Shown piece by piece: positions 3,301 to 63,735 of a DNA stretch of 64,000 bases. How positions within the stretch are numbered: position 1 is the stretch's first letter; the number at the start of each line of letters is the position of its first letter. The position numbers were made by a program, and so were the translations under genes. The stretch is from Haliotis rubra (taxonomy: Eukaryota): assembly GCF_003918875.1 (NCBI RefSeq), contig NW_025767048.1, forward strand, positions 868,001-932,000. Direction: 5' to 3'. The notes under the pieces were generated by a model. The model saw nothing but the letters and a program-made list of their open reading frames with translations. It was not told where the DNA came from and made no database searches.

Positions 3301-6300
3301 CTGATGCTAACATGTAATACTCTTATCTGATGCCAACATCTAATACTAGTATCTGATGTCAACATGTAATACTAGTATCTGATGCCAACATGTAATACTA
3401 GTATCTGATGCCAACATGTTATACTAGTATCTGATGCCAACATCTAATACTAGTATCTGATGCCCACATGTAATACTAGTATCTGATGTCAACATCTAAC
3501 AATAGTATCTGATGCCCACATGTAATATAAGTATCTGAACCCACATGTTAAAACTAGTATCTGATGCTAACATCTAATACTAGTATCCAACATCTAATAC
3601 TAGTATCTAATGCCAACATCTAATACTAGTATCCAACATCTAATACTAGTATCTGATGCCAACATCTAATACTAGTATCTGATGCCAACATCTAATACTA
3701 GTATCTGATGCCAACATGTTATGATAGTATCTGATGTCAACATCTAATACTAGTATCTGATGCCAACATCTAATACTAGTATCTGATGCTAACATCTAAT
3801 ACTAGTATCTGATGCCAACATGTAATACTAGTATCTGATGCCAACATGTTATACTAGTATCTGATGCCAACATATAATACTAGTATCTGATGCCCACATG
3901 TAATACTAGTATCTAATGCCAACATCTAATACTAGTTTCTGATGCCAACATGTAATACTAGTATCTGGTGCCCACATGTAATACTAGTATCTAATGCCAA
4001 CATCTAATACTAGTATCTGATGCCAACATCTAATACTAGTATCTGATGTCAACATGTAATACTAGTATCTGATGTCAACATGTAATACTAGTATCTGATG
4101 CCAACATGTAATACTAGTATCTGATGCCCACATGTAATACTAGTATCTAATGCCAACATCTAATACTAGTATCTGATGCCAACATGTAATACTAGTATCT
4201 GCTGCCAACATGTAATACTAGTATCTGATGCCAACATGTAATACTAGTATCTGATGTCAACATCTAATACTTGTATGCAACATCTAATACTAGTATCTGA
4301 TGCCAACATCTAATGCTAGTATCCAACATCTAATACTAGTATCTGATGCCAACATGTAATACTAGTATCTGATGCCAACATCTAATACTAGTATCTGATG
4401 CCAACATGTAATACTCGTATCTGATGCCAACATCTAATACTAGTATCTGATGCCAACATCTAATACTAGTATCTGATGCCCACATGTAATACTAGTATCT
4501 AATGCCAACATCTAATACTAGTATCTGATCCCAACATGTAATACTTGTATCTGATGCCAACATGTAATACTAGTATCTGATGCCAAACTCTAATACTAGT
4601 ATCTGATGCCAACATGTAATACTAGTATCTGATGCCAACATGTAATACTAGTATCTGATGCCAACATCTAATACTAGTATCTGATGCCAACATGTAATAC
4701 TAGTATCTGATGCCCACATGTTATACTAGTATCTGATGCCAACATCTAATACTAGTATCTGATGCCAACATCTAATACTAGTATCTGATGCCAACATGTA
4801 ATACTAGTATCTGATGCCCAACATCTAATACTAGTATCTGATGCCAACATCTAATACTAGTATCTGATGCACATCTAATACTAGTATCTGATGCCAACAT
4901 GTAATACTGGTATCTGATGCCAACATGTAATAATACTAGTATCTGATGCCAACATCTAATACTAGTATCTGATGCCAACATGTAATACTAGTATCTGATG
5001 CCAACATCTAATACTAGTATCTGATGCCAACATGTAATACTAGTATCTGATGCCAACATCTAATACTAGTATCTGATGCCAACATGTAATACTCGTATCT
5101 GATGCCAACATCTAATACTAGTATCTGATGCCAACATCTAATACTAGTATCTGATGCCAACATCTAATACTAGTATCTGATGCCCACATGTAATACTAGT
5201 ATCTAATGCCAACATCTAATACTAGTATCTGATGCCAACATCTAATACTAGTATCTGATGCCAACATGTAATACTAGTGTCTGATGCCAACATCTAATAC
5301 TAGTATCTGGTGCCAACATGTAATACTAGTATCTGGTGTCCACATGTAATACTAGTATCTAATGCCAACATCTAATACTAGTATCTGATGCCAACATCTA
5401 ATACTAGTATCTGATGTCAACATGTAATACTAGTATCTGATGCCAACATCTAATACTAGTATCTGATGCCAACATGTAATACTAGTATCTGATGCCAACA
5501 TGTAATACTAGTGTCTGATGCCCACATGTAATACTAGTGTCTAATGCCAACATCTAATACTAGTATCTGATGCCAACATCTAATACTAGTATCTGATGCC
5601 AACATGTAATACTAGTATCTGGTGCCAACATGTAATACTAGTATCTGATGCCAACATCTAATACTAGTATCCGATGCCAACATCTAATACTAGTATCTGA
5701 TGCCAACATGTAATACTAGTATCTGATGCCAACATCTAATACTAGTATCTGATGCCAACATGTAATACTAGTATCTGATGCCAACATCTAATACTAGTAT
5801 CTGATGCCAACATCTAATACTAGTATCCAACATCTAATACTAGTATCTGATGCCAACATCTAATACTAGTATCTGATGCCAACATCTAATACTAGTATCT
5901 GATGCCAACATCTAATACTAGTATCTGATGCCAACATCTAATACTAGTATCCAACATCTAATACTGGTATCTGATGCCAACATCTAATACTGGTATCTGA
6001 TGCCAACATCTAATACTAGTATCTGATGTCAACATGTAATACTAGTATCTGATGCCAACATGTAATACTAGTATCTGATGCCAACATCTAATACTGGTAT
6101 CTGATGCCAACATGTAATACTAGTATCTGATGTCCACATCTAATACTAGTATCTAATGCCAACATCTAATACTAGTATCTGATGCCAACATCTAATACTA
6201 GTATCTGATGCCAACATCTAGCACTAGTATCTGATGCCGATATGTAATACTAGTATCTGATGCCCACATGTAATAATTTCTGATGGAAAATCAACATGCA

Positions 6301-10381: not shown

Positions 10382-11426
10382 CACTCGTTAAAAAAATTCT
10401 TTCCATCCGTCATCTTTGTGTGATTGTAAACAGCTTCAGCGCCAAAACGTGTTTTTTCATGTTTTAGAAGCGTTTGAAGAACTATTCGCCAATACGTCAC
10501 CAATACAACATGCGATATTGGTCACTATAAAAAGGCAAACGTTGTGTTTGATTTTGTCATTTGTTTGCGCCTGGGAAAGAGGAAATCATCATGCCACAAC
10601 TGTGTGTCGCCAATTGAAACATCGCCATAGGCCGCCTTGAAGCTGGGGAGTCGCAGATTGCAGTTACCCGACATTTCAAGGTTCGTCAGAGCAGCATATC
10701 TCGCCTTTTGAATCCTTTCCTGCAGACCAATTCCGCCCAAGATCGCCCGAGAAGCGGCCGTCCAAGAGTTACTACCCAAGCCCAGGACCGCTCACTTGCG
10801 TCATCGTCTTGCCACAGCCGTGGAGACTGCACAACCCATCCCTGGTTTGAGAAGAATTTTCGACCAAATTGTCAGGAATCGAAGTGTGAAGTGGGGATTC
10901 GACCAAGAAGGCCAGTTGTCGCCCCTGTTTTGAAAGACTTCCATCGGCGCAATCGCTTGCGGTGGTGTTGTAAAGTCCTGAACTGGAACCTTAGAAACTG
11001 GAGGCGAGTCTGGTTCACGATTCATGAATCACGATGTCTACTTCGCAGGCGAGATGGAAGACAATGTGTTTACTGACGGAGAAATAAACGTTTTGTCCCT
11101 AAATGCATTCGACAGGTTGACAGATTCGATGGAGGCATTGTCATGGTGTGAGGTGATATATCCAGCACACAAAGGTTTGATTTAGTGGTGGTTCAGGGGA
11201 TTTTGACAGCAAATCGGTACATCAGCAAAGTCCTTGCACGTCACATGGTTCCGTTTATGGACCGACAGAGGGAGTTGTTCCACTCGTCATGGTCCGCTGC
11301 CTTGCCAATTCTAACGTCAGTGTCTTACCATGGCCTCTTTACCATTGAAATTACATGAAATAATTGCTCTTAAACTAACGCAATAAATTCTTCTATAAAA
11401 TGGCTTATGCGTTTCTTTTACGAGTG
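10382..11426 (+). mobile_element. Defective Tc1/mariner DNA transposon
   Basis: TA-flanked inverted ends CACTCGT(T)AAAAA; transposase remnants RPRSGRPRVTT, WRRVWF..ES; frameshifted. Confidence 0.85.
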
Positions 11427-22332: not shown

Positions 22333-22777
22333 TAAGGGGCGCTATTTAAACAAACTTGGAATCGCAGTTTAAACAAAAAGAGGAACAGAGAGCTTATACG
22401 TGGAAGTTATTCAGAATTACTGCAATTTTTAATTGTTCATTTTACACAATAATACAAGGCTTTTGTGGGTTGCTGTTTTACTGTTATTGTACGAATAGTC
22501 AAGTTCTAGCTTCTGAGTGTAGCTACGTAAACATGTGACCATAATGAATCATTTGAAACGCTGCCAACTTTCACCTCTACTGGCTTCTGCACACAAATAC
22601 TGACGGCTTGAGACGGCCAATCAAGTAACACGAGATTATAGGAAATAAGTTTCAACAGCACTTGTGATACACAGATGCGTTTAGAGGCCGATAACATAGA
22701 TGTTTAACAAGGTTTATCCTCTGTTTCTGGTATTTGTGCTCTCAAGAGCCGCGCAGAGAGACATTCTAAACTTCAAG
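22333..22777 (+). promoter_or_regulatory. Putative promoter/5' non-coding exon block of F, duplicated upstream of E (61880-62327)
   Basis: Strong similarity between the two blocks; TATA-like ctatttaaac; ends in donor caag|gt. Confidence 0.5.
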
Positions 22778-22811
22778 GTTAGATAATGTTTGTGTATTGC
22801 TTTGTTTCCAG

Positions 22812-25800
22812 TGGGCTGTGTCCGAGGCAGTTACTACAATGCTGATACGGGTGAATGTACGCAATGTCCAGTAGGTCAATATACAGACAGTTCTGGACAC
22901 ACCAGTTGCACTCATTGTCCAGCCCACACTACCTCAGTTGAAACAGGAGCATCGTCTAGAGTCCAGTGTGAAGGTAGACACATTCTTTCCTTAGAGAAGC
23001 TTAACAACGAGCTAAGACACATAATCACACACTGTGATCTTCAAGACATTGTTCGAATTTGCAAGCAGCCACTGACAGATATACTCATGGGAACGAATAA
23101 CACCTGAAAGTACACCTGGAAAAGAATAAAGGAACACTTGTACTTTCAGGTGTTCCCTTATTCGTTTCCACGAATATATTTACAACTCTCCTCTATTTTC
23201 CTTGCTATTGACCAGCAGAGTTGACAATTCTTTTCATTTTTGAAAGCCATTGACCAGCAGATGTTTACAATTCTCTTCTATGTTGAAACCATTGTCCAGC
23301 AGAGTTTACAATTCTCTTCTATGTTGAAACCATTTTCCTGTAGAGTTTTCAATTGTCTTCTGTGTTGAAACCATTGCCCAGCAGAGTTTATAATTCTCTT
23401 CCATTTCCAGTAGAATTAACAGTTCTCTTCTATGTTGAAACCATTGTCCAGCAGAGTTTATAATTCTCTTCCATGTTGAAACCATTGTCCAGCAGAGTTT
23501 ATAATTCTCTTCCATGTTGAAACCATTGTCCAGCAAAGTTTAAATTCTTTTCTATGTTGAAACCAATGTCCGGCAGAGTTTACAATTCTCTTCTATGTTG
23601 AAACCATTTTCCTGTAGAGTTTTCAATTGTCTTCTGTGTTGAAACCATTGCCCAGCAGAGTTTATAATTCTCTTCCATGTTGAAACCATTGTCCAGCAGA
23701 GTTTATAACTCTCTTCCATGTTGAAACTATTGTCCAATAAAGTTTGCAATTCTCTTCTATGTTGAAACCATTGTCCAGTAGAGTCTACAGTTCTCTTCTA
23801 TGTTGAAACCATTGCCCAGCAGAGTTTACCATTCTCTTCTATGTTGCCAGCTATTTCCCAACAGATTTTTCAGTTCCCTTCCATGTTGCTAACCACTGAA
23901 ATGCTGATGTTTACAATCCCCTTCCATGTTGCCAGCCATGTGTAAGCCAGGCATGTTCTCTGCGACTGGCGTGGTGCCATGCAGCCCGTGTGATATCGGC
24001 CAGTACCAGGACAGCTGGGGAAGCAGGTCTTGTCTGGAATGTCCAGGGGGAAAGACTACACTAACCCAAGAAGCAAAGTCAGTTGACAAATGCCAGGGTA
24101 AAAAACAAATTTAGCTTTAGTTTTCTTCATCAATTCTTCTGCCGTTACTCATACATAAACGCTTTTTTGAGTTTTTAATGATGATACATGACATTTATGA
24201 GTAGTTTGCCCATAAGATGAAACATTTGAAATGATCGCGTTGCAATGATGAACCGATACATTCGTATAACTCGGTTTTCTGTTTAGAATTTGATGTTGAG
24301 TTAATTCCGAGCGACAACACGACTGCTACTGCACAGACAGCTGTTGGAGGTCAACTGGACCTGCCTAATGTCACACTGGGGCTGTGGTTGAAGACACAAA
24401 GTCATCACAGTCACATCAGATGGCAAAGAGTTGATGTCATTACACATGGAAATCAACCGTCTCAGAACTAGGATTCAAGGGTACATAATCGTCCTGTTAA
24501 TTAAGAGATACAATTTATATTAAAAGACATTTTGTATTTAATGTTCCTCAATATGAAAATGTTTTACTCACATTCAACTTTAATTCGTTTGCATATTGAA
24601 GTGTTACCATTAAGTCCGCTGTCTTCCTGAATGATACGATGTGGCACAAGCACATTGTCACCGTCACACATGGCGATGTTGAAACGTACACAGACGGTGT
24701 ATCTGGAGAGACAACTGGGCATACAGGCAAGCTGACAATCAACGGATCTCTGGTGGTTACTGCTGGAGGTATGTACGAGCAAGTGAGCATGAGCATCTGA
24801 AATATTCGGAGCGGTGGGGTAGACTATGGGTACAATGCGTAAATCCCAATTACATTTTTGTTGTATCATCTCCTTCTGATTACAGTGGGTGCTGGGGTAG
24901 CCTAATGGTAAAAGTGTTCGCGCCGCAGACCCGGGTTCGATTGGGTTCTACCCTTGGGTACAATGTATGAAGCCCATTTCTAATGTCCCCCGTCGTGATA
25001 TTGCTGAAACATTAAAGCGGCGTAAAACCAAACTCTCTCAGTTACTATGAAATATTCTATAAAACATAATCATAGAACTAAAACTTTGTTTGAAACGTTT
25101 GTCACTTGTTGTAGTGAGTCACAGTTCCCATACACACGAAGTCATGGCGTTGCTCGGTAAAATGACTCCGGAAATATACGTTCATTCACAGGGGAAGGGT
25201 TCGCCGGAATCATCTCCCAGGTGAACATATGGTCCGGTATTCACGCCTCTATGTCTCGAAGATGCTTCAGCGATGATCACGGAGACTTGTTTTCGTGGCA
25301 GACCTTTGCCAAAGCTGATTTAGTAGACAGTTTCGTACAGATACCCAGCGAGTGTGATGGTAAGCGTTTTGTTTGTCAGAAATGAAGATTTACATTAAAA
25401 ATATTTCAGGCTATTCCCTACACTAAATTCTCCATCCCAAACCGATGGATCACACTGTTCTGATATTTTGAGGGTCAAGGATGTGCCCATATGTAATTGT
25501 TCTGAAAAGAATGTAGTGGTACAGCATTTCGTTTACGTGTTACATCACATCCGCCAGCGTTTGTGTAGCGATTGATGGCTTCCTATAAGAACTAAGAGAT
25601 ACAAACGCTTACATGTAAAGGAAAACATACGACCTAATGTCCAAATGCTGATTGTAAAAATTATCCCCTTCAGACACTGACGTCTGCAGCTCCAGTCCCT
25701 GTTTCCATGGCGACTGCACTGATGAGCTGGGTGGGTATAGGTGTACGTGTAGTGGTGGCTTCACCGGAGTGAACTGCGACGTCAACATCGACGATTGTGG

Positions 25801-27780
25801 CGGTAATGTGTGCGCAAACAACGGTACATGCGTGGACGGCGTCGAGAGCTACACGTGTTTGTGTACGTCGGAATATACGGGCCAGTACTGTGACGATGTT
25901 CTTGGTTAGAATTATTGCCTCGATAGATGGCTGTTTTCTACCATCCTGTCTGACAATATCTGGAAGCCCTTGCAGTTGCATTAACTGGCGTGTCAAACAA
26001 AATATACATTAAGTATAGAACGTGAGTGCAAAATAATACCCAGGCTTGTCTATCCTCAGAATTCCGTTTCATGTAGAGGGAAAAAGTGAAAATTGTATGA
26101 ATGGTTCACTGAAAATCAGCGAGGACACCAAGTGTTCGTATAAAGAGTAAGCAAGTCCTGCCCTGTCGGTAGGTTTAAAACAACATTAACAAGTAAGTTA
26201 CGATTGTCGAAAACCGTGTACCATAGTGCAAGGAAGATGGTCGAAGCATCTTCTTGCTGTTGTACACGAAAGGTAATGGAGACGCATTCACCTGTATAAG
26301 GACATGTTGTTTTTCTGCAGTGCACGGGGAATGGGGAAGCTGGGGCAACTGGAGCAGATGCAGTGAAGAATGTGATGGAGGGGTCAGAAATCGTACACGG
26401 CGCTGTGACAATCCACAACTTCAGAATGGGGGGAGGGACTGTGACGGGGGCGACGACGATGTAGGAGACAGTAACACACAGGCGTGTCCAGGTAGGCGCA
26501 ACATCATTGCTACGTTAGCAATGCAATCACTCAAAGCTAAACGGAAATTCATGAAGAAATATATTATATTAGTTGTTGTATCATCTCTTTCCTATGAAGA
26601 AAGATCCGGGTTAGAATTGGTCTTCAGCAACCCATGCTTGTCGTTAGAAGCCACTAACGGAATGGTCATGTTCGGTTGTCACATGACATCCTGTCCCATG
26701 TACATTGATCGATACTCATGATGGCCCAGACTCGACATACAGCTGGAATATTGCTGAGTGCGGCGTTAAACAACATCAAATAAAATCTTTCCGATGACGT
26801 AATTATATAAGCCATTGTATACGTCAATATTTTGCATTTAAGACATCAGGAACAAATATTTCATAAAATCCAATTTCACATCAATTTGGTTCGTCTTAAC
26901 CAGGAAGCAGATGATATAATCTTTCCGCGAGAATCGTGTCATATAGCCTAATGTTGAAATAAATTTAAAAAATGATTAAGTTATCTTTAGTTTGCTCCGA
27001 TGTTGTTAAGCCGATGAATGGCACTTTTGACTGCGACACGAAAGGGAGGATGATGTTCTGCAACGTGAGTTGCGACGAAGGCTACAGCTTCGACATCCCC
27101 CCGCTGGACATTTACGAGTGCGGTGATGAAACCGGATATGTCTGGAACTTTAAAACTGAAGATAACCCATACCACAGACTACCAAACTGCATGGGCAAGT
27201 TACATCTTAATTTAACCATGCGATACAAACAGTATTATCGCTGTTGGTACACACTTATGAAAATGTTTTCTTTGTCAATGTTTTTGTAGACCTACCGTTT
27301 AAAATTTGAAAACGTACCTTTTTTACGCTCTTTGCGTAGTGTATTTTCGATGCCACTCACGCTCACCCCAAACCCTAAAAAGGACTTTAAATGGTATGAA
27401 CATGTAAATATTAGAGTATACAAAAATCCACATAGAAGAAATGTATATCCACAAATACTGTAAAATTGGTCTCCATTTAAAACGCAGAATCTTTAATCAT
27501 ACACCTCCAACGTTTGTAGAAATCCACCCAGCAGATGCACTAGACGTTCACTACACAGCCGAGTATACGGATCTGATTTGTGACGCCGCCAATGTGGACG
27601 AGGCAAAAAACAAAGTTCAAGAGGTCGTCCAAGCAGAAATATCCTCCATCCCCTGTATAATAGAAATACGTTGCCAGGTGACCAGTGTTGTTATTGACAA
27701 CTGTGAGGGGCAACAACGTAAAAAGCGTTCGGCGTCCCCCGCCGGGTTTACGGTGACGTTCGGAAACAGCCCTGCAACTG
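22812..27780 (+). pseudogene. Gene F: 5'-deleted and 3'-truncated SVEP1-like paralog (GCC2/3 x2, pentraxin/LamG, EGF x2, TSP1, CCP, SEA-like half)
   Basis: Exons 22812-22973, 23936-24097, 24287-24480 (194 bp, frameshift after WLKTQ), 24602-24768, 25192-25359, 25674-25904, 26321-26491, 26991-27194 (GC donor), 27520-27780. Same order as D and several identical sizes (162,162,231,171,204). No ATG/signal exon and no TM exon found. Confidence 0.8.
23180..23935. repeat. 41-bp minisatellite (ACAATTCTCTTCTATGTTGAAACCATTGTCCAGCAGAGTTT), about 17 units
   Basis: gttgaaacc recurs at 41-bp spacing (23282, 23323...). Confidence 0.92.
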
Positions 27781-28639
27781 GTGTGTACGGATAACGGATA
27801 TAGTGTCATGTTGTTGGTCACCTCCAGATGGCGCCATCTATACAAGGCAAGGGAGGTAACTGAGGGTAAAAATGCAGTTTCCACGCATGCTGAACTAGGC
27901 TCGAATAATGGAGCTAGGTATTGACTGGACTAACGGGTCATACATATACCAATCCAAATATCGTAACAAAATCGGCATCCGGTTCATAAATAACATAGCG
28001 ACTGTCGTGAAGATATTAGTGTAGTCAGTCAACTTCCTTGCCTCGGGAATATGGATGGTTCTTGTTTCTGATTCTTTATATTAAAAGGCCACTGATCCAG
28101 AGCGATTAATGTTTCCAGTCAACAGTCATATTAGGAAACCGGGCGTTTGGTAGTCAGGCTTTGTAACGATTTATGGCGTGGCATCTTACCCCGGCGGAAT
28201 GGGCCACCGCTCATAACATCAATCACCGGATTGTTTGTTCTGACCTGAGTATTAACAGGATGTCCTCATATAGAAGGAACATTGAGTTTGGCGTCAAGCA
28301 CATAGTGATAATTGATGACGTTGTCGTATCATTCGTGACCCATTCGTGTTATTCCGGGACAAGCCGAATACCGTTCTTGGAGTTTACGGAAAGGGCAAGT
28401 GTTGTGACGAATGGTTGTCGTATACGAGGAGATGTGAAGATTGTAAGAGTAGCCTCCCTTGAAACGCGATTCCCTTGCTCTGATGATTTTACGTTGCTCA
28501 TCTTTTTGGAAGACCTGGCTTAACCGACTTAAGAGTTGTTAATTTATCAGCAATGTAGCGGAAATTCAGAATGAGAACTTCACCTTATCACATATAGTCA
28601 TGTCGCTGCTAACAGATTTAACCCACGCCACTTATCGCG

Positions 28640-31369: not shown

Positions 31370-34300
31370 CTACTCAGTTGTCACATCCGACTGTGGGGGA
31401 ATCTTCACAGGAGACATGCTTGAGTCCGGCGGTGACTGGGCCGTTTGAAGGGGATACCACTGAAGCCATTTGAATTCGACATCATTTACATAATTTCATT
31501 ATGTACATAGGTTTCAGAAGGTTAGGTTATATATTCATCACCAAAAAGTATCAACGGGGTAATGTTATATAATCTGACCCACTATCTGTAGTTACATTCA
31601 TACTTTCCCTACCATGGTGGGCGAGCTGTCCCAGGGGTGTCGGCCCGGGAAAGCGAAATTTCAATATTCCATATTCCCGGTAAAGCGAAAACAAAGTTGT
31701 GCTAGAAGTGCCGCGAATTGCTATGAAAACATCGGATAACCGTACATCAGATTAGCGCGCGACCCCAATACTCGATCTGTTAGCCGCTTAACTGAGATGA
31801 AGTTTCAGTTGTTTCAAGTTTCAGCACGTACGTGGCCCTACTTAACTCTAGTTTTATTAATTCATGTAATGAATTATGATCCTGGCCGAATTTGTCAAAG
31901 TTACGTCAACTTTTTTCAAGGAACATACCTACCCTTATCTATCTACAGCAAGCTTGAGGTGCCGGGATCGAGTCCACCTGTTACCGGGTGTGAAAACCTT
32001 GGAGTCAACTTTGTGTGCAGACTCTCTCAGTGTTGTCACAAGCCCTAGTGTACAGTTCACAACCCCGTTCACTTAATAGAACCCACGAATCTGTTGGTAT
32101 ATGACCAGATGGTGGCCACATGAATACGTGCAAACACATCATTGCTGGTACAACAACGTGCAGTAAACTTGGACAAAGTACTGTGACTATGTGTCCCAGT
32201 CCACCCAGATGTGAATGGGTACCACGTTGGGATGGGAAAGCCACAATAACTCGGTGCACCTAATGGCTGCAAGAGTTGTATAATACCCAGGCGGTTGAGA
32301 CTGATAATACGATGTGCCGTTGAGATTGACATCCAATGATCGAAGGAAAAAAACAAGCGCCTTGAGCATGCACTAGTGGCGTGGATATGTGCGTTATATA
32401 AATATCCTATAATAATAATCATGAAATTGGCTGAACGAATACGCCGCAAAGAATGCCTACATAATTCTATTCCATGTGCGTAATGTTCACAACCCGAAGG
32501 ATAAATTATTGAACAAAAATTATACAAATCGACACAAACAATCCAATGAAGTTAATAGTCGCGATATAGTTGGCGTTTGGCATATTTGCGGTTTCTCAAT
32601 ACACTGAAATAATGGAATTGCTGCTTATTAAGTATTAATCGGTCTCACAGTCACTCAACCACATCATTTTCTCTTGAACCCGGGCTTTTCTGCAATGCTT
32701 AAACCCAAAATGAAGCAAGTCTGGTTTCAGAATCATCTCAATATTGACTGGGGCGCCTTTTCCATATAAAATGTTTTTTTTGTTTCTACCAAAGTAATAT
32801 AAACTAGCCACATTAAGAAACTGTGCATTGTCAAAATATTATCCCAGTTGATAGGTACGATAACAATGTCAAAGGTACATATAAACTTTAATGGAGGAAT
32901 CATGGGACCATAACAAGTCGGGAGAATTTCAATTGAAAAGTCAATCACAATGACGTCACGAGTCCACAAGCGGGACAGGGGTCAAACGACCATGTCACAA
33001 GCTAAATAACGGGTATGTCCACCATCGGCATTGAGAACAGCAGTGCATCGACGACGCATAGAGCCTATCAAACGTGCAAGAAAGGCTTGTGGGATGTCAC
33101 GCCAGATTCTCTCAAGTTCTGTTGCAAGGTCAAGGACGTTATCTGGCGGATGAGGAAGACGGCGTAGACGTCGATCCATCTCGTCCCAAACATGCTCTAT
33201 CAGGGAGAGATCCGGTGAATGTGCAGGCCAAGGCAGTAAGTCAACGTTGTGGTGTTGCAAGAAATCCATAGCAACCCTTGCCGTATGAGGGCGGGCATTG
33301 TCCTGTTGGAATGTTAACCCAGGGCCATGACGTTGCAGAAAAGGAATTGCCACAGGTCGAAGAATCTGATCCCTGTAGCCCACACCAGTTAAGTTGCCCT
33401 GAACAATCACCAAAGGAGTTCTTTGGCGTGCTGTTATTCCACCCCAAATCATCACGGAACCACCACCAAAGCGATTCCTCTCCAAGACACAGGCCTGTGC
33501 ATAACGTTCTCCCACGCGTCTACAGGCACGTTGACGTCCATCACTATGGGAAATGTTAAACCTGGACTCATCTGTTAAAACAACATTTCTCCACCAAAAC
33601 AAGGGTCTGCGGACATGATTTCTGGGCACCACATTCGGCGAGCTTGTCGATGACGTTGTGTCAGGATAGGCCGTATGGCGGGACGTCGTGGTCTGATCCC
33701 ATGATGACGTAAACGTTGTCGAACTGTGTTGGGGTGGATACGGCGAAGTCCTGGGATGGTTCGAGCAGTCATCACTGCAGTCTGAAACCTGTGGCGAAGA
33801 TGGGTCACCCTTATCCATCTGTCCTGTCTTGGCGCTGTTACACGTGGACGTCCAGAACGTGGCCGATGGATGACGTCATTTGTGTTCTGGTAGGGTCTCA
33901 CCAGTGCAGAAATGGTGTTCCGGTGGCAGTGGAAATGTGCAGCCACTTGTCGTTGAGACATCCCCCCACGGACCATCCCGATGGCCTCATGACGTTGTGC
34001 AGACGTGAGCCTTGGCATGCTATGCGTTTCAATAGCCGTTTAATTTTTTGAACGATCGCAAGGGCAGGGGTTGAGCTTTCCAAAGTGACAATATTGTGTG
34101 GCATTCATTTGCTCTGTTTATCTTTCCCGGAATGCACGTGCAACAACGTATTGCACGTCTCAAGGACGAACCCACTGACGTCACGGAACGTGGACATGTT
34201 GGATACATGTCACTAATCTCTGAGTTTAAATCCTTATGTGTCTACACAGGTTTGATAAATTTAGATTTTAAATTTTTGCATGCACAGTTTCTTTATGTGC

Positions 34301-46300: not shown

Positions 46301-49300
46301 TCTAAACACATCAGATAGTAACTTAATTTGTTGCACTAATGTACACACATTGGTGGGAGTTTGATGAAGTACAGTAAACGATACATACGCTTAAAAGGAA
46401 ATCTAAGAAACCACTAATTTCAGTTAGTTATAGCCGTAGTTCTTTATATGCATGTTGATTAAACCATACAACACGTGGTCAGTTCATTATATGCGTAGTA
46501 TTATAATACTTTGTAATATTGTTCATTTAATGAGGGCTAACGAATATTTATCGAGTTATACATTCCTTGAGCTGAGTACCAATGCAGTTTCATGGAAACG
46601 ATACGATGTTACTAATATAATATAAGCGTCTGAATCGACCTAACCTGTGGGTATTGTGCATACCTATGCATTTTCCAGGTAGTGAGAACTCTCCCTTCTT
46701 GTTGCAAATGACCATTGATGGTCCTTCAATTGAGAAACCCCTTTTGCAAGATAGTGTACACAAAGTCTTGAATGTTGGCGGATTCCCCATGCAATAGACA
46801 TTTCCGTTCGTCACATTTGGTATTGTCGGACACTCCTTTTCTGTAAAATACTAGTACATTTTACTTACATATACGTATCCTGCTTTGTACAATTTGCCTC
46901 TAACCTTTCATATCCATAAACCTCAAAGTGAAAACAGCTGAAAATAGCCACCAATTTGGGGTACAATTCCTTCGATCTTTCTCTTACTTCAGTTGAACAC
47001 GAAAGACATAGCCATAATATGGCCCAATCAGCTTGAACCAGCACAAAGAACTAGAGAACCTAACTTAATAAAGCTTTCCGGTCGTGTTTAATTCTACCTC
47101 GTCATAGGTATGAAATCACTATGGAGTCACGTGAGAAGAGACCGCGTGCTTAATCTTTTTCATTCTTTTTCGAGGTGAGCAGACGCTGTTCACCTTTCTT
47201 CATATAAAGCGGTAGATGAACTCAGAACCTGGTTCATCTAGTTCGTTATTTTCTTAGTTTGTTGAAACTATCGCGTGCTTAATCTTCATTTTTTAAAGCT
47301 GTGAATGGACACATATCCACCACAACATACTCAATCCAAAATGGGAGGGTACATAATACCGGGTGGGCAGATGACTCCTCCGTTCCTGAACTATAACTCG
47401 GTAGAACTACAATCAAAGTTCACCTTACAGGTAAGTCTCGTTTGATTTATCAATTAATCGTGCATGTGAGAAACTGCCGAATCGTTATGTTAGATAGCTT
47501 TCACATGTTTGGGGTTTACAGCTAACCTGTACACTCGAAAGTAGCACTCCATTTCTCCTTGTCACAGACTGACTCAGTCACATTATCTGCCTCGTATCCC
47601 TCATCGCAGTACAGCTTACAGGTTGACCCAGAGATCTCTCTCTTGTCGCACTCCACTCGCCCTGTGCTCGGCCAGTGGATCGGGGAGCATCGTTGCACTG
47701 GATTTATAATATATTACAATCACTTTATTAAAGATGGTTTTTTTGTGTGAGCCATGACACGTCAAGGAGAAAGAACTGGGAATTATTAAAAATCAAAATC
47801 TGTATAGCGGAAGAAGACCAAATCCTTGTCCTAAAAATTATTTATTTCGTTTAGAAATGATTTGTGTACACATTCTACGTTTAATCATGCAAACAGTTAG
47901 AATTACTTTAACCAAGACATAATATCTACAGTAAATTAGACCTTAGTTTGAGCAAACCTTTTACTGTGAATTGTATGCTACAAGATGCAGAAAGCCCTCC
48001 TTTGTCCACGGTCTTGTATTGTATGAAATGGGTACCTTCGTCAAACACACTTCCAGGATCTTTTCCCATTATCTGTTGCACTCTTTGAGTTATGAAATGT
48101 TAAGAGGGTTTAAGTTATATATTACAGATTCAAATACAAATTTAGCAGATGAGGTACGGGCGGTCCTGTTATAGTCAAGCTGCACAGGCTCACCCTGATA
48201 CTTTAACAGCCAGACTGGCCATTCCCATAATCAGCTTCAATCCCTTACCCCTCTATCCAGAGAGTGAATGACATGAACGCCCTATCTATTTGGTCCAACA
48301 AAGAACGTTTCGGGGAATATAAAGACTCCACAGCACTGCAGCCTTCTGCATTAAACCGTGTCAAAAGGGATGTGACAGCATATTCACAACCGTCTGCAGG
48401 AAATAATTTCTAAACTTGAGACATCCAAACAGTAGCAATGTGATATAGATGAGGCCTTTAACTATTTTGATATGTTTTTAAAAGAAATGCACGACTATGA
48501 CGGCACTATGGAATGCTATGTGCAAGGCAGAGTGCTGTTGGTGTCGGAGTCGTGGTCGGACACGTCTGGAGTTGAAGGCTGAGTGTGTGCACACCCGGAC
48601 AGTGTTTGACAAAGCCGTTTAGCAAGCCAAGCGGATGTATAGGGAAAAGACCCTGCAAGACGTTGAAGAAATATGTCAATCAAGATCAAGTGAGTTTTGG
48701 AAGAAGATCGGCAAGGCTGGTGTTGGAAGTGCAAGAAGAAAACAGATTCCTATGGAGGTGGTTACTGAAGATGGATCGATATCCAGAAATAAGCCTGTTG
48801 TTTAGACACATGGACTGCAGCATACTCCACCCTTCTTAACAATAAAGTCGATGGAGAGGAAGGCAGTCGTTACAAACGTCAGCCCCCGCCTTAATAACGC
48901 AATAACACTTCAGGAGATACGCCATGTTCTACTCCAAGCCCAAAAAGGTAAAGCACGATGGCATACAAGTGGAAATGCTAAAGAATGAAGAAGCTCTCAC
49001 GTTTCTACACAATTCCTTTAATCTGTGGTTTAGAAATAGGAAAGTTCCAACTGGATGATCGAAAGGAATTCTCAACCCCATACTAAAGTCATATACAGAT
49101 GATCCTCGCGACCCTTTGTCATACAGAGGAATAACACTAGCACGTTCGCCTTACAAGCAATACTGTGGAATTTTAAACAATGGGCTTTCTGGGCATGTTG
49201 AAAACCGTGATATACTAGATGATGAGCAGAACGGCTTCAGAAGAGGAAGATCAACCATAAAACATGTATCAGCTATAGAGACCAGGAAAAGTATTGGCCA

Positions 49301-52300
49301 ACAGACATTCGCAGCTTTCGTGGACTTTAGGAAAACTTACGACTGTATAGATAGAAGTATTCTATGGAAAACGTTGCAGAATATTGGAATTGAAGGGAAA
49401 ATGTCTAATGCCACCGTTTCGCTTTACCATAATGTAAAGTCATACGTGCGGATAAGCGGGTCAAGTACGCCCTGGTTTCGGGTCAACAGTGATCTACGTC
49501 AAAGATGTCTGCTTTTTCACTCCTACTATTCAACCTGTACATCAACAACCTGATATCAACCCTAACGCCTCTGACATCGGCATACCTGTTGACGACAAGA
49601 GCATAAGCGTCCTAGCCTACGCCGATGATATCATTCTACTGGCCTTGATCGAAGTTGACGTGAATACACTTCTAGAGGGACTCAGTCAGTGGTGCCAGGT
49701 AAACAAGATGTCTGTCAACCCAGAGAACACAAAGGTCATACATTTTAGAAGCCAAGCAGTAGAAAGAACAGATGTGATATTTCAGTGTTGAGACAAGATC
49801 TTAGAGATAGTATAAAGCTACAATTACCTCGGCCTGCTCTTGACAGAGCATATGAACTACACCCGGATGGGAAATGCAGTGGTAGGTGCAGCAAGCAGGG
49901 CATTAGGACTCCTCATATCAAAGTGTAAAATCCTAGGAGGCATGCAGCACAAGACTTTCACCATGCTTTACGACTCCATGGTATGGGCTACTATCGACTA
50001 CGGTGCTGCAATATGGGGAACTTATCATATCCCAGCCATAAACGTTGTTCACAACCGAACTATGACGTACTAATGGGCGTGAGGAAGTTTACGCCGAAGA
50101 GTGCTGTATCAGGTGATATGGGATGGGTGCCACCGGTTGTCCGGCGATGGAAGAGTGTTGCTCGATTTTACAAGCGATCATGCGATCAGAACCCGAACAG
50201 ATTATCTTCTAATGTGTTCAAATGGGCCCATTCTAAGTCTGTGCCTAGTAAGCGGAACTGGCATCAACGTGTACACAGGAAATTTAGAAGTTTAGATCTT
50301 GAACATTTTATCCCAATTGGAAATACGTTTAACATACGCTTTTTAATATCAGAGTTTGAACAGAAAGTGATGCAAAACTTTTTACAGGAGTGGAGTGTTG
50401 CAGTCAATCAGGAGAACAGTAACCGGTCAGGACGGGAAGAAAAGTTGCGACTGTATGGTAACAGTCCTATGGAGTTGAGCCGCATCTACAGAGTGACCTC
50501 CCTTGGTCGTATCGCCGAGCACTGGCAATGATCCGCTTTGGAGTCGCCCCGCTACGTGTTGAGACAGAACGATACACCAACATGACCCTGAACCAACGTG
50601 TGTGTTTTAATTGTAATGAGTGCGTTGAGGGTGAATGTCATGTTTTGTTCCAATGCCTACTTTATTTTGAGGTTACAAACAGTCTTTTAGTCAAATATGA
50701 AGAAATATGTTATAATTTTAAATGTTTGAGTATCATGTCCGAGGTTGAGATGTTTTATTTAGCAGCCAAAACCTGAAATATTTTATTGGAAAAACGGCAA
50801 GGTATTTTATGTCATTGTGGGTAGTCCTTTTTCTAAGAGTTTTTATATATAAAGTTGGATTTGGAAGCATATTTTAATACTGCAGATGTGAATTGTGAAC
50901 ATTGTCCCTCAAGGAATCAAAAGGATTTTTGACTCAATATCCTTATCTACACCAATGTCATCTATTGTATAAACTTTGCACTTTATTATGCACTTTGAAT
51001 ACGACTATCGTTTATCACGTCTTCTGCCTACCCTTTGCTGCCATCTTCTGGATCTGTAGCAGTAGGTGGAGACCAAGTCACATGTGCTGTCGTCGCACCT
51101 GTCTCTGCTGTCACATCACTCACTCGTGGACACGTGATCGTTGGAGGTGTGTTTGGCGGGGAGCTCTCTGTCGTGAAACATCGTAACTGATAATATGGAC
51201 ATGTTTGTTGTTTTCTTTAAGTTGGGGGCTTGTGATTTCGTTAAAAACCCTGTATGTCAGAATACTGACATAGAGAAAGACCGCATGTGGACAGTGGTAC
51301 ATTCTGTTCATATAATGTTAACTAAATGACACAAAACATGCAATTCTTTTACAGAGATCTAGAAACAGTGTATATACGTTTACAAATCGGCACAATATCT
51401 AAATATTGAGATTAAAACGAACAAAACCTTCAGAATATAATTATCAGGATCTTACTTTCGCAAACAAACATGCAGACGGCTTGTGCTATTCCTGTAATTA
51501 GTCCAGTTACTGCCCCCATTATTGGCGCTACATACTGGATTTGACGTTTGTGTCTGGTTATAGCATTGTGTTTCAGGTCGTCGTGTGCTGAAATAATGTA
51601 TCACACGGTCATTATTACCATGCAAACTCAACAATATGGCAACCAGGCATATTATTTGTGTGTGATAATACATGTATAATTACTCTTTTTGTCTCAACAT
51701 TCTATTTAGTCAGTTTGTATTTCTTATTAACGTTCAGTTACGAAAATGAATCACCGTGTGTCCACGTGGTATCTTCGTTACATAGCATGACTCGCATGGT
51801 TCCTGGAAATCTACATTTGGTTCCTGGAAGAACACTCTTGGTAACGGAGTCGGTTTTAGGAAACACATCCTTGTCACAAGACCCATCAAACGACTCTGGC
51901 AAACTGCATCCAATATATGTAGCCTGTGTAATCAAAAGAAAACAAAAACGTCAAATTTAGCTTACCAAATTCTTTAGTGAAATCCTGGGACCATTTTCGC
52001 ATAAAGGCGGGACCGGTTAGACTATAAATAGATGAACGTTTGTATTTAAAAGTTTCATTAAGGTTAATCTACATTCATCGACTATCATAACTGCTCTGTT
52101 TAGGTGCTTAAGAGATTATGAATCGTAATCTGAATAACAGGTTCAGAATATACAGCATATAAAACAATATTTTTATATACGTGCCAATTTCAGTTTAATG
52201 TTACACATCTGTGTTATTATGTAATGATTTCAAATATTCCCTTCGTGAGGTCAAATGGTAAGATGGAATGTATCATACCTGAGTGATATTTGTATGAATC

Positions 52301-62200: not shown

Positions 62201-62927
62201 TTCAACAGCACTTGTGTCACACAGTAACGTTTCGAGGCCGATAACAGAGATGTTTAACAAAGTTTATCCTCTGTTGATGGTATTTGTGCTCTCAAGAGCC
62301 GCGCAGAGAGACATTCTAAACTTCAAGGTAAGATAAAAATAAATAAACGTCTGCTCTTTATGTACAATCATGAATACGTACATTTTAACTACAGCTAATG
62401 CTCGTAAATTTGTAAATAGTCATACTACAGGTAGATGTATTTGATCAAAGTTAAGATTAAGAGAGTTAATACTGTTAAAATTGACACAGCATTTAAGACA
62501 TTTTAAGCTTGAATATCTGCTAGATGGTCCATTTCCAGTTGTCATGGCGGCATTTTAAGTCATACATAGGATGATGATATTATGGTATTCTACAGTGACG
62601 TGTCACATCTGTAATAATGACGTAGAAAGAGAGAGCGGAGGACTTTTGAATTTTACAATGTCGATAAAGATTATGTGTTAGTATTCCTTTAATTATCGGG
62701 CATCCCATACTACAGAATACAGCAAAATCTGGAAACAGGTAATATTGTTCCTCCTTATTGTCATCAGCGTTCAGTTTGAGAAACACTCTTGAGTGCGATT
62801 ACACATCATTTATAACTGAACACCGTGCCTGATGTTTGCTTCGTGTATAACACAAGCTTCCATACATCTTGTGAGATATCTGATTGTCGAAGGAGATGGG
62901 GTGATTTGGTAGCCGACTTTGTTTCAG

Positions 62928-63735
62928 TCATGCCCGTGGCACCCTGACGTGAATCCTCCCTTGGAGTCTTGCAACTTAAACAACGGTACTGTCGTGTTAT
63001 CTCACAACAAGACACAGATACTGGAGCCAGGCACTCAGTGTGATGTAGTTTGCCAGACTTCCGGAGAACCAGGAACTGCGACCTGTGTGGATGGAAAATG
63101 GGACATAGCATGTCAGAGAGGTAAGAACCAAAGGGTTAAGATTAAATATCCGTTAACGAAATAGTCAGATATATAGAAGCCAACACATGATTACATAGCT
63201 TACAATTCATAGACCATACAACGTTAACTTTGTTTTATTTGAGTAAGGGGAACTGATTAGTTGAGCATATACATTGTTTATATGTGCGAGATTGTTAGCA
63301 AAGTGTTTTTAATCAGGAACACAATGCACGGTAGACATCAGTACCTGCATGATCATGAGCCTCCAGACTTGTTCGTTACAAAGGAACTTATTGGTTCAAA
63401 TACCGCTAAGAAGTCAAAGGTATAGGTTTCTAATATCGGTAATACACCTGAGTATATTTGAAACTTGACTGTTTGTTTAGTGGAACAATCACTGGTTTAG
63501 ATCATGATGTGAGTATAACTGAAAAATTATCTTTACGCCAGTTTGGCAGTTCCTGATTTTTCTCCCGGTGTAGATGCCTCACCATACTGTACATTTTCTA
63601 AAGTCTTTTATCGTTGTGTAGGTGTGACAAGCACATTTTTGCAGAAGGAAAACGCGCAGAGAGAGAAACGCTTTCTTGGAATATTCGTAGCGGTAGCAAT
63701 TGGATGCATGATATTTTGCCACCATCGACCAAGAG
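62928..63735 (+). CDS. Gene E: 5' exons of another large SVEP1-like paralog, continuing beyond the window
   Basis: Exon 62928-63120 (CCP-like, phase 0-1) and exon 63622-63735 (REKR-FLGIFVAVAIGCMIFC, phase 1-1) match D exons 2-3 in order and phase; start/signal exon not identified. Confidence 0.7.

What the first reader, a model, noticed from the sequence alone, without database searches (positions are those of the whole stretch)
63622..63735. Paralog E keeps the same logic with a different peptide: REKR|FLGIFVAVAIGCMIFC
Seen: same exon position and phase as in D, with conserved RxKR and C-M-x-x-C but a different, shorter hydrophobic segment. Established: basic site followed by FLG resembles the start of the RSV F fusion peptide (FLGFLLGVG). 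Inference: conserved mechanism with a variable tip, suggesting a diversified effector or recognition module. Resemblance to viruses is probably convergent.
Basis: partly seen in the sequence, partly recalled or inferred. Interest (0 to 1): 0.72.

Follow-up and report, generated by a model that had tools for sequence, protein, structure and literature searches.

The report
Protease site plus greasy tip exon
This is a real, conserved exon of a large abalone cell-surface protein: it encodes a protease-cutting site followed directly by a very greasy peptide, a layout old within molluscs that looks like the tip of viral fusion proteins, though nothing yet shows what it does.

Summary
Window 63622-63735 (+) is a phase 1-1 exon encoding VTSTFLQKENAQ-REKR-FLGIFVAVAIGCMIFC-HHRPR. 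It is exon 3 (aa 92-128) of an intact 26-exon gene, RefSeq XP_046578198.1 (Haliotis rubra LOC124285953, 1473 aa). That protein maps exactly onto window 62250 to about 20 kb past the window end.

The protein runs: signal peptide, small CCP-like cap, this exon, then HYR/Sushi/Ephrin_rec_like/LamG/EGF/TSP1 domains, a C-terminal membrane anchor and a tail. Four abalone orthologue loci hold the same separate exon. A whelk, a clam and an uninterrupted transcript contig carry the same layout.

Across ten relatives in three clades, only the Lys-Arg of the cutting site and one Pro are invariant between cap and HYR. The peptide after the site varies in length and sequence and is not hydrophobic in one clade. 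A true membrane span does not fit, because conserved cysteines and glycosylation sites lie on both sides.

Most likely a convertase cut makes a membrane-seeking peptide the new N-terminus of the large subunit. No heptad repeats, no sequence match to viral fusion proteins and no significant positive selection were found. No RNA run was listed for this species. The scan noted the same motif earlier on paralogue D.

The parts
62250..62327 (+). E exon 1: start codon and 26-aa signal peptide; ends in phase 0 at a GTAAGA donor
   Evidence: Exact mapping of XP_046578198.1 (P0015) aa 1-26; DNA shown; orthologous exon 1 in four loci
62928..63120 (+). E exon 2: six-Cys CCP(sushi)-like 'cap' domain (aa 27-91) with two conserved N-glycosylation sequons
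   Evidence: No Pfam hit. Weak library-wide match (E 2.4e-5) to a Sushi-repeat protein. Sequons N45 and N53 conserved. AF2 gives beta strands at pLDDT 55-65
63622..63735 (+). E exon 3, the finding: 114 nt, phase 1-1, aa 92-128
   Evidence: A separate phase 1-1 exon of 114-126 nt in four orthologue loci
63624..63659 (+). Linker VTSTFLQKENAQ (aa 92-103)
   Evidence: AF2 pLDDT below 50 and no secondary structure
63660..63671 (+). REKR, a proprotein-convertase (furin-type) consensus site (aa 104-107); the predicted cut is after R107
   Evidence: K106 and R107 are invariant in all 10 aligned family members. P4 is Arg in most and Lys in two
63672..63719 (+). Hydrophobic tip FLGIFVAVAIGCMIFC (aa 108-123), with small residues at tip positions 3, 7 and 11 and C-x3-C at its end
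   Evidence: It is the second most hydrophobic segment of the protein after the C-terminal anchor
63720..63734 (+). Basic/Pro hinge HHRPR (aa 124-128) leading into the HYR domain; exon 4 starts just past the window end
   Evidence: P127 invariant; exon 4 maps from 64022 in extended window coordinates
51456..51587 (-). Comparator: exon 3 of paralogue D, with RHKR, a 28-aa Gly/Ala-rich hydrophobic run and CMFVC; phase 1-1
   Evidence: D is collinear with E over the whole gene
22700..22777 (+). Signal-peptide exon of a recent partial duplicate of E that goes straight to the Ephrin_rec_like exon, so it lacks the cap, cutting site, tip and first HYR/Sushi block

Best explanation
Exon 3 of an intact, selectively maintained gene for a 1473-aa type I membrane glycoprotein, named SVEP1-like by RefSeq. 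It encodes a flexible segment between an N-terminal CCP-like cap and the first HYR domain. The segment holds a proprotein-convertase site (REKR) followed directly by a 16-residue very hydrophobic peptide and a basic/Pro hinge.

Shown: the gene model, the exon's conservation and phase, the invariance of the Lys-Arg, the variability of the tip, and the extracellular character of the sequence on both sides.

Inferred: the whole chain, including the tip, is translocated into the ER lumen. A furin-type convertase cuts after R107 in the late secretory pathway. The roughly 80-aa cap is then detached, or stays attached by disulfide or non-covalent contacts. The hydrophobic peptide becomes the free N-terminus of the large membrane-anchored subunit. 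It then acts as a membrane- or hydrophobic-surface-seeking helix with a small-residue face. It could dip into the cell's own membrane or a partner's membrane, or drive self-association. Which of these it does is unknown.
For: Gene model. P0015 = XP_046578198.1 lies on a contig of the window's length. It contains the exon in frame and maps exactly to 62250-83995 at 1469 of 1473 residues.

Conservation. Four orthologue loci hold a separate phase 1-1 exon. An uninterrupted 4.4-kb ORF on the Logan contig from SRR14803116 carries RQKR plus a 15-aa tip inside the large mRNA. Babylonia and Solemya proteins have the same layout.

Cutting site. K106, R107 and P127 are the only invariant residues between the cap and HYR across three clades. 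The family carries further R-x-K/R-R sites elsewhere. AF2 puts aa 90-127 in a disordered, exposed stretch.

Not a membrane span. There are 6 conserved Cys and 2 conserved sequons before the tip, and 80 conserved Cys and 13 conserved sequons after it. All downstream Pfam domains are extracellular types. Tips of the Trp-rich clade are 11-14 aa and contain Pro. The Solemya tip holds two Lys. One clade has an acidic peptide instead.

Membrane affinity. All hydrophobic tips score -3.5 to -9.3 kcal/mol on the Wimley-White interfacial scale (scale values from memory). Small residues at tip positions 3, 7 and 11 are kept in 8 of 8 E-type tips.

Selection. Omega is about 0.2 over the rest of the gene.
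Against: No cleavage data exist. No RNA run was listed for H. rubra, so inclusion of the exon in this species rests on the RefSeq model and on a relative's transcript.

By a rough Hessa-scale sum, E's tip is membrane-span grade (about -1.5). It ends in Cys residues and a basic cluster, as a stop-transfer anchor would, so translocation of the tip is an assumption.

Two orthologues have Lys rather than Arg at P4, which is weaker for furin itself. Phe at P1' is unusual for cellular furin substrates (my knowledge). AF2 gives no helix for the tip, though its confidence there is very low.
Confidence: 0.55

Rival explanations
1. The cutting site regulates assembly rather than membrane contact. The hydrophobic peptide is a masked interaction strand or helix that packs against the cap or the HYR domain. 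Cleavage would free it for oligomerisation or ligand binding. This resembles the furin site plus external hydrophobic patch of ZP-module proteins, or a tethered hydrophobic ligand.
For: The Lys-Arg is invariant even in the clade whose following peptide is acidic and amphipathic. So cleavage, not hydrophobicity, is the universal feature. The small-residue stripe fits helix-helix packing. The tip's sequence and length vary freely.
Against: AF2 shows no packing of aa 90-127 against either neighbouring domain, though confidence is low and the alignment has only ten rows. The tips are aromatic/aliphatic with very favourable interfacial energies, more than a buried strand needs.
Confidence: 0.2
2. 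The segment is a real transmembrane stop-transfer anchor. This would apply either in a short isoform (signal peptide, cap, anchor and a short tail by retention of intron 3) or in a fraction of full-length chains with an alternative topology.
For: E's 16-mer is the second most hydrophobic segment of the protein. A rough Hessa sum with length correction is negative for E, the GCA_022045235.1 orthologue, the transcript P0010 and Babylonia. It is flanked by basic residues and ends in Cys, like palmitoylated anchors. The only weak hit in the Protein Data Bank is a photosystem membrane helix. Read-through of the donor gives a stop after 7-24 codons in every species.
Against: Conserved Cys, sequons and extracellular domain types lie on both sides of the tip, and there is only one further hydrophobic segment, at the C-terminus. 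The homologous position in the Trp-rich, Solemya and acidic clades cannot span a membrane. Read-through tails are not conserved. The transcript contig splices the exon into the large ORF. RefSeq lists no isoform tag on these models.
Confidence: 0.12
3. The family is a true membrane fusogen, or the exon was captured from an F-type viral or retroelement envelope gene. The tip would then be a homologue, not a look-alike, of paramyxovirus-type fusion peptides.
For: R-x-K-R is followed by F-L/F-G and a small-residue stripe at tip positions 3, 7 and 11. As I recall them, paramyxo- and pneumovirus F1 N-termini look the same. Mollusc genomes carry Ty3/gypsy elements with F-type envelope genes that have a furin site and a hydrophobic fusion peptide (bioRxiv 10.1101/2023.10.26.564294).
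Against: There is no heptad repeat or Fusion_gly/Baculo_F signal. The tip is followed by a Pro-rich hinge and a HYR domain. No viral protein matches in the PDB sequence search at E up to 10. The tip is the least conserved part of the N-terminal region and carries indels, whereas viral fusion peptides are usually the most conserved part. Thirty-eight codons are too few to establish homology.
Confidence: 0.06
4. The exon is an annotation artefact or a decaying exon of no function.
For: The RefSeq models are computational. No RNA run was listed for this species. The exon can be skipped without changing the frame, because it is phase 1-1.
Against: The ORF, splice sites and phase are kept in five abalone loci, with only in-frame length changes. 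The exon is present in an uninterrupted transcript contig of a distant mollusc. The Lys-Arg is invariant across clades.
Confidence: 0.03

Closest known systems
Class I viral fusion glycoproteins (paramyxo-/pneumovirus F, HIV Env) and F-type envelopes of Ty3/gypsy errantiviruses
   Same: A signal peptide, an N-terminal fragment, an R-x-K/R-R convertase site followed directly by a hydrophobic peptide starting F-x-G with a small-residue stripe, a large subunit and a C-terminal anchor. By my recollection (Paterson and Lamb 1987), such anchor-competent peptides are nevertheless translocated in the viral proteins.
   Different: There are no heptad repeats after the tip, no Fusion_gly fold, and no significant sequence match. 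The N-terminal fragment is a small CCP-like cap rather than a receptor-binding head. The tip is fast-evolving with indels. The remainder is a mosaic of adhesion-type domains.
SVEP1/polydom-like mosaic adhesion proteins (the RefSeq name of the family)
   Same: Sushi/CCP, HYR, EGF, Ephrin_rec_like and LamG/pentraxin-like modules.
   Different: No von Willebrand A domain. This protein is membrane-anchored with a cytoplasmic tail, is much shorter, and has several convertase sites. The cap, cutting site and tip have no counterpart that I know of in vertebrate SVEP1.
ZP-module proteins: consensus furin cleavage site followed by the external hydrophobic patch
   Same: A convertase site followed closely by a short hydrophobic element. 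In ZP proteins its release controls assembly (my knowledge).
   Different: In ZP proteins the patch lies near the C-terminus, is a beta strand of ZP-C, and leaves with the membrane stub. Here the element is N-terminal and stays on the large subunit. There is no ZP module.
Propeptide-capped receptors (Vps10p/sortilin family) and tethered-ligand receptors (PARs, adhesion GPCR Stachel)
   Same: A short N-terminal piece is removed by a protease, which exposes a new N-terminus that changes the receptor's activity (my knowledge).
   Different: Those new N-termini are not 12-28-residue membrane-grade hydrophobic peptides. The domain contexts are unrelated.

Membership tests
Class I viral fusion protein (paramyxovirus F type) | Convertase site immediately N-terminal to a hydrophobic fusion peptide | tested here: met
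   REKR is followed directly by a 16-aa hydrophobic run. The same layout is present in orthologues. This is sequence pattern only; cleavage was not shown.
Class I viral fusion protein (paramyxovirus F type) | Heptad repeat A directly after the fusion peptide and heptad repeat B before the anchor (six-helix bundle core) | tested here: not met
   The tip is followed by a basic/Pro hinge and a HYR domain. AF2 shows only beta structure downstream. Pfam finds HYR, Sushi, Ephrin_rec_like, LamG, EGF and TSP1 and no fusion glycoprotein family.
Class I viral fusion protein (paramyxovirus F type) | Detectable sequence relationship to viral F or Env proteins | tested here: not met
   phmmer of the exon peptide of E and of the H. 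rufescens orthologue against all PDB chains at E up to 10 gives no viral protein. The only hit is a photosystem membrane helix at E 1.3.
Class I viral fusion protein (paramyxovirus F type) | Fusion peptide is the most conserved segment of the protein | tested here: not met
   dN in exon 3 is 2-4 times that of the rest of the gene. The tip measures 16, 18, 19 and 20 aa in four abalone species.
Class I viral fusion protein (paramyxovirus F type) | Trimer that mediates membrane merger | not testable with these tools
   Needs expression, lipid-mixing and cell-fusion assays.
Proprotein-convertase (furin-type) substrate | R-x-K/R-R motif in an exposed lumenal segment | tested here: met
   REKR. K106 and R107 are invariant in 10 of 10 aligned relatives. 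aa 90-127 have pLDDT below 50 and are unstructured. The site lies downstream of a signal peptide.
Proprotein-convertase (furin-type) substrate | Actual cleavage after P1 Arg | not testable with these tools
   Needs protein chemistry.
SVEP1/polydom family | Sushi, HYR, EGF, Ephrin_rec_like and pentraxin/LamG modules | tested here: met
   Pfam scan of P0015. Laminin_G_3 is found rather than Pentraxin.
SVEP1/polydom family | von Willebrand factor A domain and a long Sushi array | tested here: not met
   No VWA hit and only three Sushi stretches in P0015. The RefSeq name is a similarity label.
Single-pass transmembrane anchor (stop-transfer) | Hydrophobic run long and hydrophobic enough to span a membrane | tested here: inconclusive
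   The rough Hessa sum is negative for E (-1.5). It is about 0 to +1 in three orthologues and +3.4 to +6 in the Trp-rich and Solemya tips.
Single-pass transmembrane anchor (stop-transfer) | Sequence on the two sides lies in different compartments | tested here: not met
   Conserved Cys (6 before, 80 after) and conserved N-x-S/T sequons (2 before, 13 after) lie on both sides. Extracellular domain types follow the tip.

The most novel reading that the evidence does not exclude
Molluscs keep an old family of endogenous cell-surface proteins that use the trigger logic of class I viral fusion proteins. A convertase cut removes a small cap and unmasks an N-terminal membrane-inserting peptide on a large anchored subunit. 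The peptide would engage another membrane, for example in cell-cell adhesion or fusion, in gamete or haemocyte contacts, or in attack on microbial membranes. The tip would be tuned clade by clade: aliphatic Gly/Ala stripe, Trp-rich, or Lys-amphipathic.
Probability: 0.12. Interest if true: 0.85.

Novelty: new variant of a known kind. Interest (0 to 1): 0.5.

Why it matters
If the cut and the membrane activity are real, this would be a host-encoded family, not derived from a virus, that pairs a convertase site with a fusion-peptide-like N-terminus. It would have been conserved since before gastropods and bivalves split. That would give a tractable case of convergence on the viral 'cleave to arm' design.

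It also poses a concrete cell-biology puzzle. E's tip is hydrophobic enough to stop translocation, yet the domains after it must be extracellular. How does the translocon let it through?

For annotation, it shows that these 'SVEP1-like' abalone proteins are multi-cleaved type I receptors with a distinct N-terminal module. A natural paralogue in the same window lacks the whole module. One Haliotis clade has swapped the greasy tip for an acidic peptide. Both offer built-in comparisons.

Tried and rejected
- **RNA evidence.** The look-up of sequencing runs on a 6-kb stretch covering exons 2-10 listed no RNA run.
- **Own-genome search.** Searching with the exon peptide and with the cap exon found only E itself plus chance matches. 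L006 is a low-complexity region. D is too diverged to be found this way.
- **Pfam.** The cap and exon 3 give nothing.
- **ESM Atlas.** A feature search of aa 27-135 gave no usable hit.
- **AF2.** The model of aa 1-215 from a 10-row alignment is poor (mean pLDDT 58). It only says that exon 3 is modelled as disordered. I did not run fold searches on it.
- **tblastn mapping.** It missed short exons, so I replaced it with exact k-mer mapping.
- I redid it from stored files. The viral controls were left out, so the comparison with RSV, HIV and paramyxovirus tips rests on my memory only.
- **Joined models.** The full protein came from the database as P0015.
- **A second basic site releasing the tip as a free peptide.** Rejected, because only P127 is conserved after the tip.
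- **An internal start codon making the tip a signal peptide.** Rejected. E has no in-frame Met before the run, and the upstream exons are conserved coding sequence.
- **Black abalone sweep.** The SVEP1 homologue under a sweep in black abalone (PMC13229213) could not be tied to this locus.
- **Tree.** The family tree is a quick search with long branches. I use it only loosely.

Full report
**What is at the coordinates.** The window is eukaryotic, about 40% GC, and has no N. It is G000:C2158:868001-932000 of a 1.38-Gb assembly in 2855 contigs.

Bases 63622-63735 (+) read, in the frame set by the flanking splice sites, as VTSTFLQKENAQ-REKR-FLGIFVAVAIGCMIFC-HHRPR. The acceptor is tgtgtag|GT and the donor is AGAG|gtaaca. 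Both introns are phase 1 and the exon is 114 nt.

A loose pattern for R-x-[KR]-R followed by C-x(2-4)-C, run over all six frames of the window, gives five hits. Only two join the site to a hydrophobic run: this exon and 51460-51555 (-), which is paralogue D.

**The gene.** The exon upstream (62928-63120) encodes a six-Cys domain with the C...C...W...C spacing of a CCP/sushi module. It ends with the first base of a codon that exon 3 completes.

A 64-aa query of that exon against 1.84 billion representatives gave one strong hit, P0001. This is a 1491-aa Haliotis protein, matched at residues 30-92. In P0001 the match is followed by KEKR, an 18-aa hydrophobic run and RSRPR.

The cluster of the next relative, P0005, holds P0015 = XP_046578198.1, 'uncharacterized protein LOC124285953 [Haliotis rubra]'. 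It is 1473 aa and lies on a contig of 1,072,991 bases, which is the length of C2158.

P0015 contains the finding's peptide at aa 92-128. It maps letter for letter, at 1469 of 1473 residues, onto the window plus the 30 kb I fetched downstream. There are 26 coding segments from 62250 (ATG) to 83995 in extended window coordinates.

The protein came from the database.

**Architecture.** The order is:
- a signal peptide (exon 1, 62250-62327);
- the CCP-like cap (aa 27-91);
- exon 3;
- a HYR domain split over two exons;
- Sushi and HYR repeats, three Ephrin_rec_like repeats, a Laminin_G_3 domain, EGF and TSP1;
- a 22-aa C-terminal anchor at aa 1404-1425 and a 44-aa tail.

I did not test that label.

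E is collinear with D, exon by exon, over the whole length. D's exon 3 (51456-51587, -) is also phase 1-1. It lies between a homologous Cys-rich exon and a split HYR domain.

**Is the exon real and conserved?** I fetched four orthologue loci: GCA_037392515.2 (two tandem copies), GCA_022045235.1 and GCA_023055435.1. The tool names the last as H. rufescens. From memory, the first two assemblies are H. asinina and H. cracherodii.

All four loci have a separate exon with the same acceptor and donor and the same phase. Their lengths are 126, 126, 120 and 123 nt against 114 nt here, so all length changes are in frame.

P0010 is a 1454-aa relative encoded by an uninterrupted 4.4-kb ORF on a 4.5-kb Logan contig of run SRR14803116. 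The abalone genes have 25 introns, so this contig is a transcript. It carries RQKR, a 15-aa tip and RPRDN inside the large reading frame. That is transcript-level evidence, in a relative, that the module belongs to the large protein.

For H. rubra itself no RNA run was listed, so the exon's inclusion in this species rests on the RefSeq model.

**Family survey**.
- **E type.** R/K-x-K-R, then F-L/F-G, then 12-17 more hydrophobic residues usually ending in C-x3-C, then R-P-R or P-P-R. Found in five abalone proteins, P0010, and the whelk Babylonia areolata (REKR plus a 15-aa tip).
- **The clam Solemya velum.** RSKR, then a Trp/Phe-rich 19-mer with two Lys spaced i and i+4, ending C-x4-C.
- **A second Haliotis clade** (P0007, P0017, P0018, and P0020 from H. 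rubra). R-x-K-R, then an 11-14-aa Trp-rich run that contains Pro and has no Cys.
- **A third Haliotis clade** (P0019, P0008, P0009). RSKR or RPKR, then an acidic, Met/Leu-containing peptide with no hydrophobic run.
- **D.** RHKR plus a 28-aa Gly/Ala/Thr-rich run.

In the alignment of ten N-terminal regions, which does not include D, the only invariant residues between the cap's Trp and the HYR domain are K106, R107 and P127.

A quick tree puts the non-abalone proteins with the E clade, with weak support and long branches.

The universally conserved element is therefore the dibasic cutting site. A hydrophobic or aromatic peptide after it is common and old, shared by gastropods and a bivalve, but it is not universal.

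**Evolutionary rate.** I built codon alignments from exact protein-to-genome maps.
- The rest of the gene has omega of about 0.2 in every abalone pair.
- Exon 3 has dN 2-4 times higher. For H. rubra against one GCA_037392515.2 copy, dN is 0.145 against 0.064. For GCA_022045235.1 against H. rufescens, it is 0.070 against 0.016.
- Omega for exon 3 is 0.2-0.7 in the deeper pairs.
- The two youngest pairs show 6 non-synonymous to 1 synonymous change and 5 to 0, but these counts are tiny.
- Fisher tests of exon 3 or the tip against the rest of the gene give p of 0.08 to 0.47.

Most replacements keep hydrophobicity. The exceptions are Glu, Asp and Asn in three orthologues. I read this as constraint on the character of the tip, not on its sequence. 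Positive selection is not demonstrated.

**Why not simply a membrane anchor?** This was my first reading. E's tip does look like one. On a rough Hessa-scale sum with length correction (values from memory) it scores about -1.5. That is second only to the C-terminal anchor at -3.6. It also ends in Cys residues and a basic cluster.

Four observations argue against a span:
- The five abalone orthologues conserve 6 Cys and 2 N-x-S/T sequons before the tip, and 80 Cys and 13 sequons after it.
- Every domain after the tip is an extracellular type.
- There is only one more hydrophobic segment, at the C-terminus. A spanning tip would therefore leave 1300 residues of disulfide-rich modules in the cytosol.
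- At the homologous position, other clades have peptides that cannot span a membrane.

Read-through of the exon 3 donor gives unconserved tails of 7-24 aa. A short anchored isoform is possible but has no support.

The property shared by all the hydrophobic tips is a strongly favourable Wimley-White interfacial energy of -3.5 to -9.3 kcal/mol (scale from memory). The eight E-type tips, the group that includes Babylonia, Solemya and P0010, also keep small residues at tip positions 3, 7 and 11. This would form one helix face.

AF2 on aa 1-215 is poor (mean pLDDT 58). It models aa 90-127 as unstructured at pLDDT below 50, lying between a beta-rich cap and the HYR domain. That fits an exposed cutting site, and it gives no support for a buried strand.

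**Most likely mechanism.** The chain is fully translocated. A furin-type convertase cuts after R107. The cap leaves or stays attached. The hydrophobic peptide becomes the N-terminus of the anchored subunit and seeks a membrane or hydrophobic partner.

The gene model, the conservation and the extracellular context are shown. The cleavage, the translocation of the tip and its activity are inferred.

As I recall from Paterson and Lamb (1987), paramyxovirus fusion peptides can anchor a protein in a membrane, yet they are translocated in their native context. That gives a precedent for the translocation step.

**Comparison with what is known.** The layout matches class I viral fusion proteins in the cutting site, the F-x-G start and the small-residue stripe. 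It fails three defining features tested here:
- there is no heptad repeat or fusion-glycoprotein fold;
- there is no sequence match to any viral protein among solved structures at E up to 10, and the only hit is a photosystem helix at E 1.3;
- the tip is the fastest-changing part rather than the most conserved one.

Mollusc genomes do hold retroelements with F-type envelopes that carry a furin site plus a fusion peptide (bioRxiv 10.1101/2023.10.26.564294). Thirty-eight codons cannot establish descent, so convergence is the safer reading.

The RefSeq name 'SVEP1-like' reflects shared modules only. There is no VWA domain.

Literature searches found no description of this N-terminal module. A SVEP1 homologue reported under a recent sweep in black abalone (PMC13229213) could not be linked to this locus.

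**Verdict.** The scan had already noted the same motif on paralogue D in this window (s1-339773).

The follow-up on E adds five things:
- the full gene model;
- transcript evidence from a relative;
- the family-wide picture of an invariant cutting site with a variable tip, including one clade without a greasy tip;
- the topology argument;
- a negative test for positive selection.

I rate the interest as moderate. The pattern is unusual and old, but no function has been tested.

Noticed in passing
window 22336-28021 (+), signal-peptide exon at 22700-22777: This is a recent duplicate of E, 85-97% identical at protein level, with the introns alike as well. It keeps E's upstream region and signal-peptide exon (ATG and a GT donor intact), then continues directly with the Ephrin_rec_like exon that matches E aa 702 onward. 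About 8.2 kb holding exons 2-11 is missing: the cap, cutting site, tip, first HYR/Sushi block and first basic-site module. It is a natural tip-less paralogue if it is expressed.
   Followed up: partly
window 49059-50773 (+), inside D's intron; also 72451-75226 in extended coordinates (L002/L003), inside an E intron: Long reverse-transcriptase/LINE-like ORFs sit in introns of both D and E. In D the element splits the two exons of the first HYR domain.
   Followed up: no
L010 and L014 (GCA_037392515.2, CM074533.1, roughly 55-80 kb apart): That species has two tandem copies of the E orthologue (P0005, P0016). Exon 3 differs by 5 non-synonymous and 0 synonymous changes. One copy has F-L-D instead of F-L-G right after the cutting site.
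   Followed up: partly
L002 about 5998-6050 (extended window about 69998-70050; P0015 aa 603-615): At the first internal basic site, other clades have R-R-K-R or R-S-K-R (P0007, P0010, P0019, D). The E clade reads I-T-V-K-R, so the P4 arginine is lost. That cut may be weakened or lost in E.
   Followed up: no
window 32985-33875 (-) and 10618-11073 (+): Tc1/mariner-like transposase ORFs lie between the family's genes. One is an open frame of 297 aa.
   Followed up: no
L013 (Logan contig SRR14803116_9722): A full-length transcript of a family member from an unidentified mollusc. In a quick tree it groups with the Solemya protein, on long branches. The source organism could not be determined with the tools.
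   Followed up: partly
E's tail instead reads Q-Q-P-Y-V-L-P and has no PPxY in the last exon.
   Followed up: no
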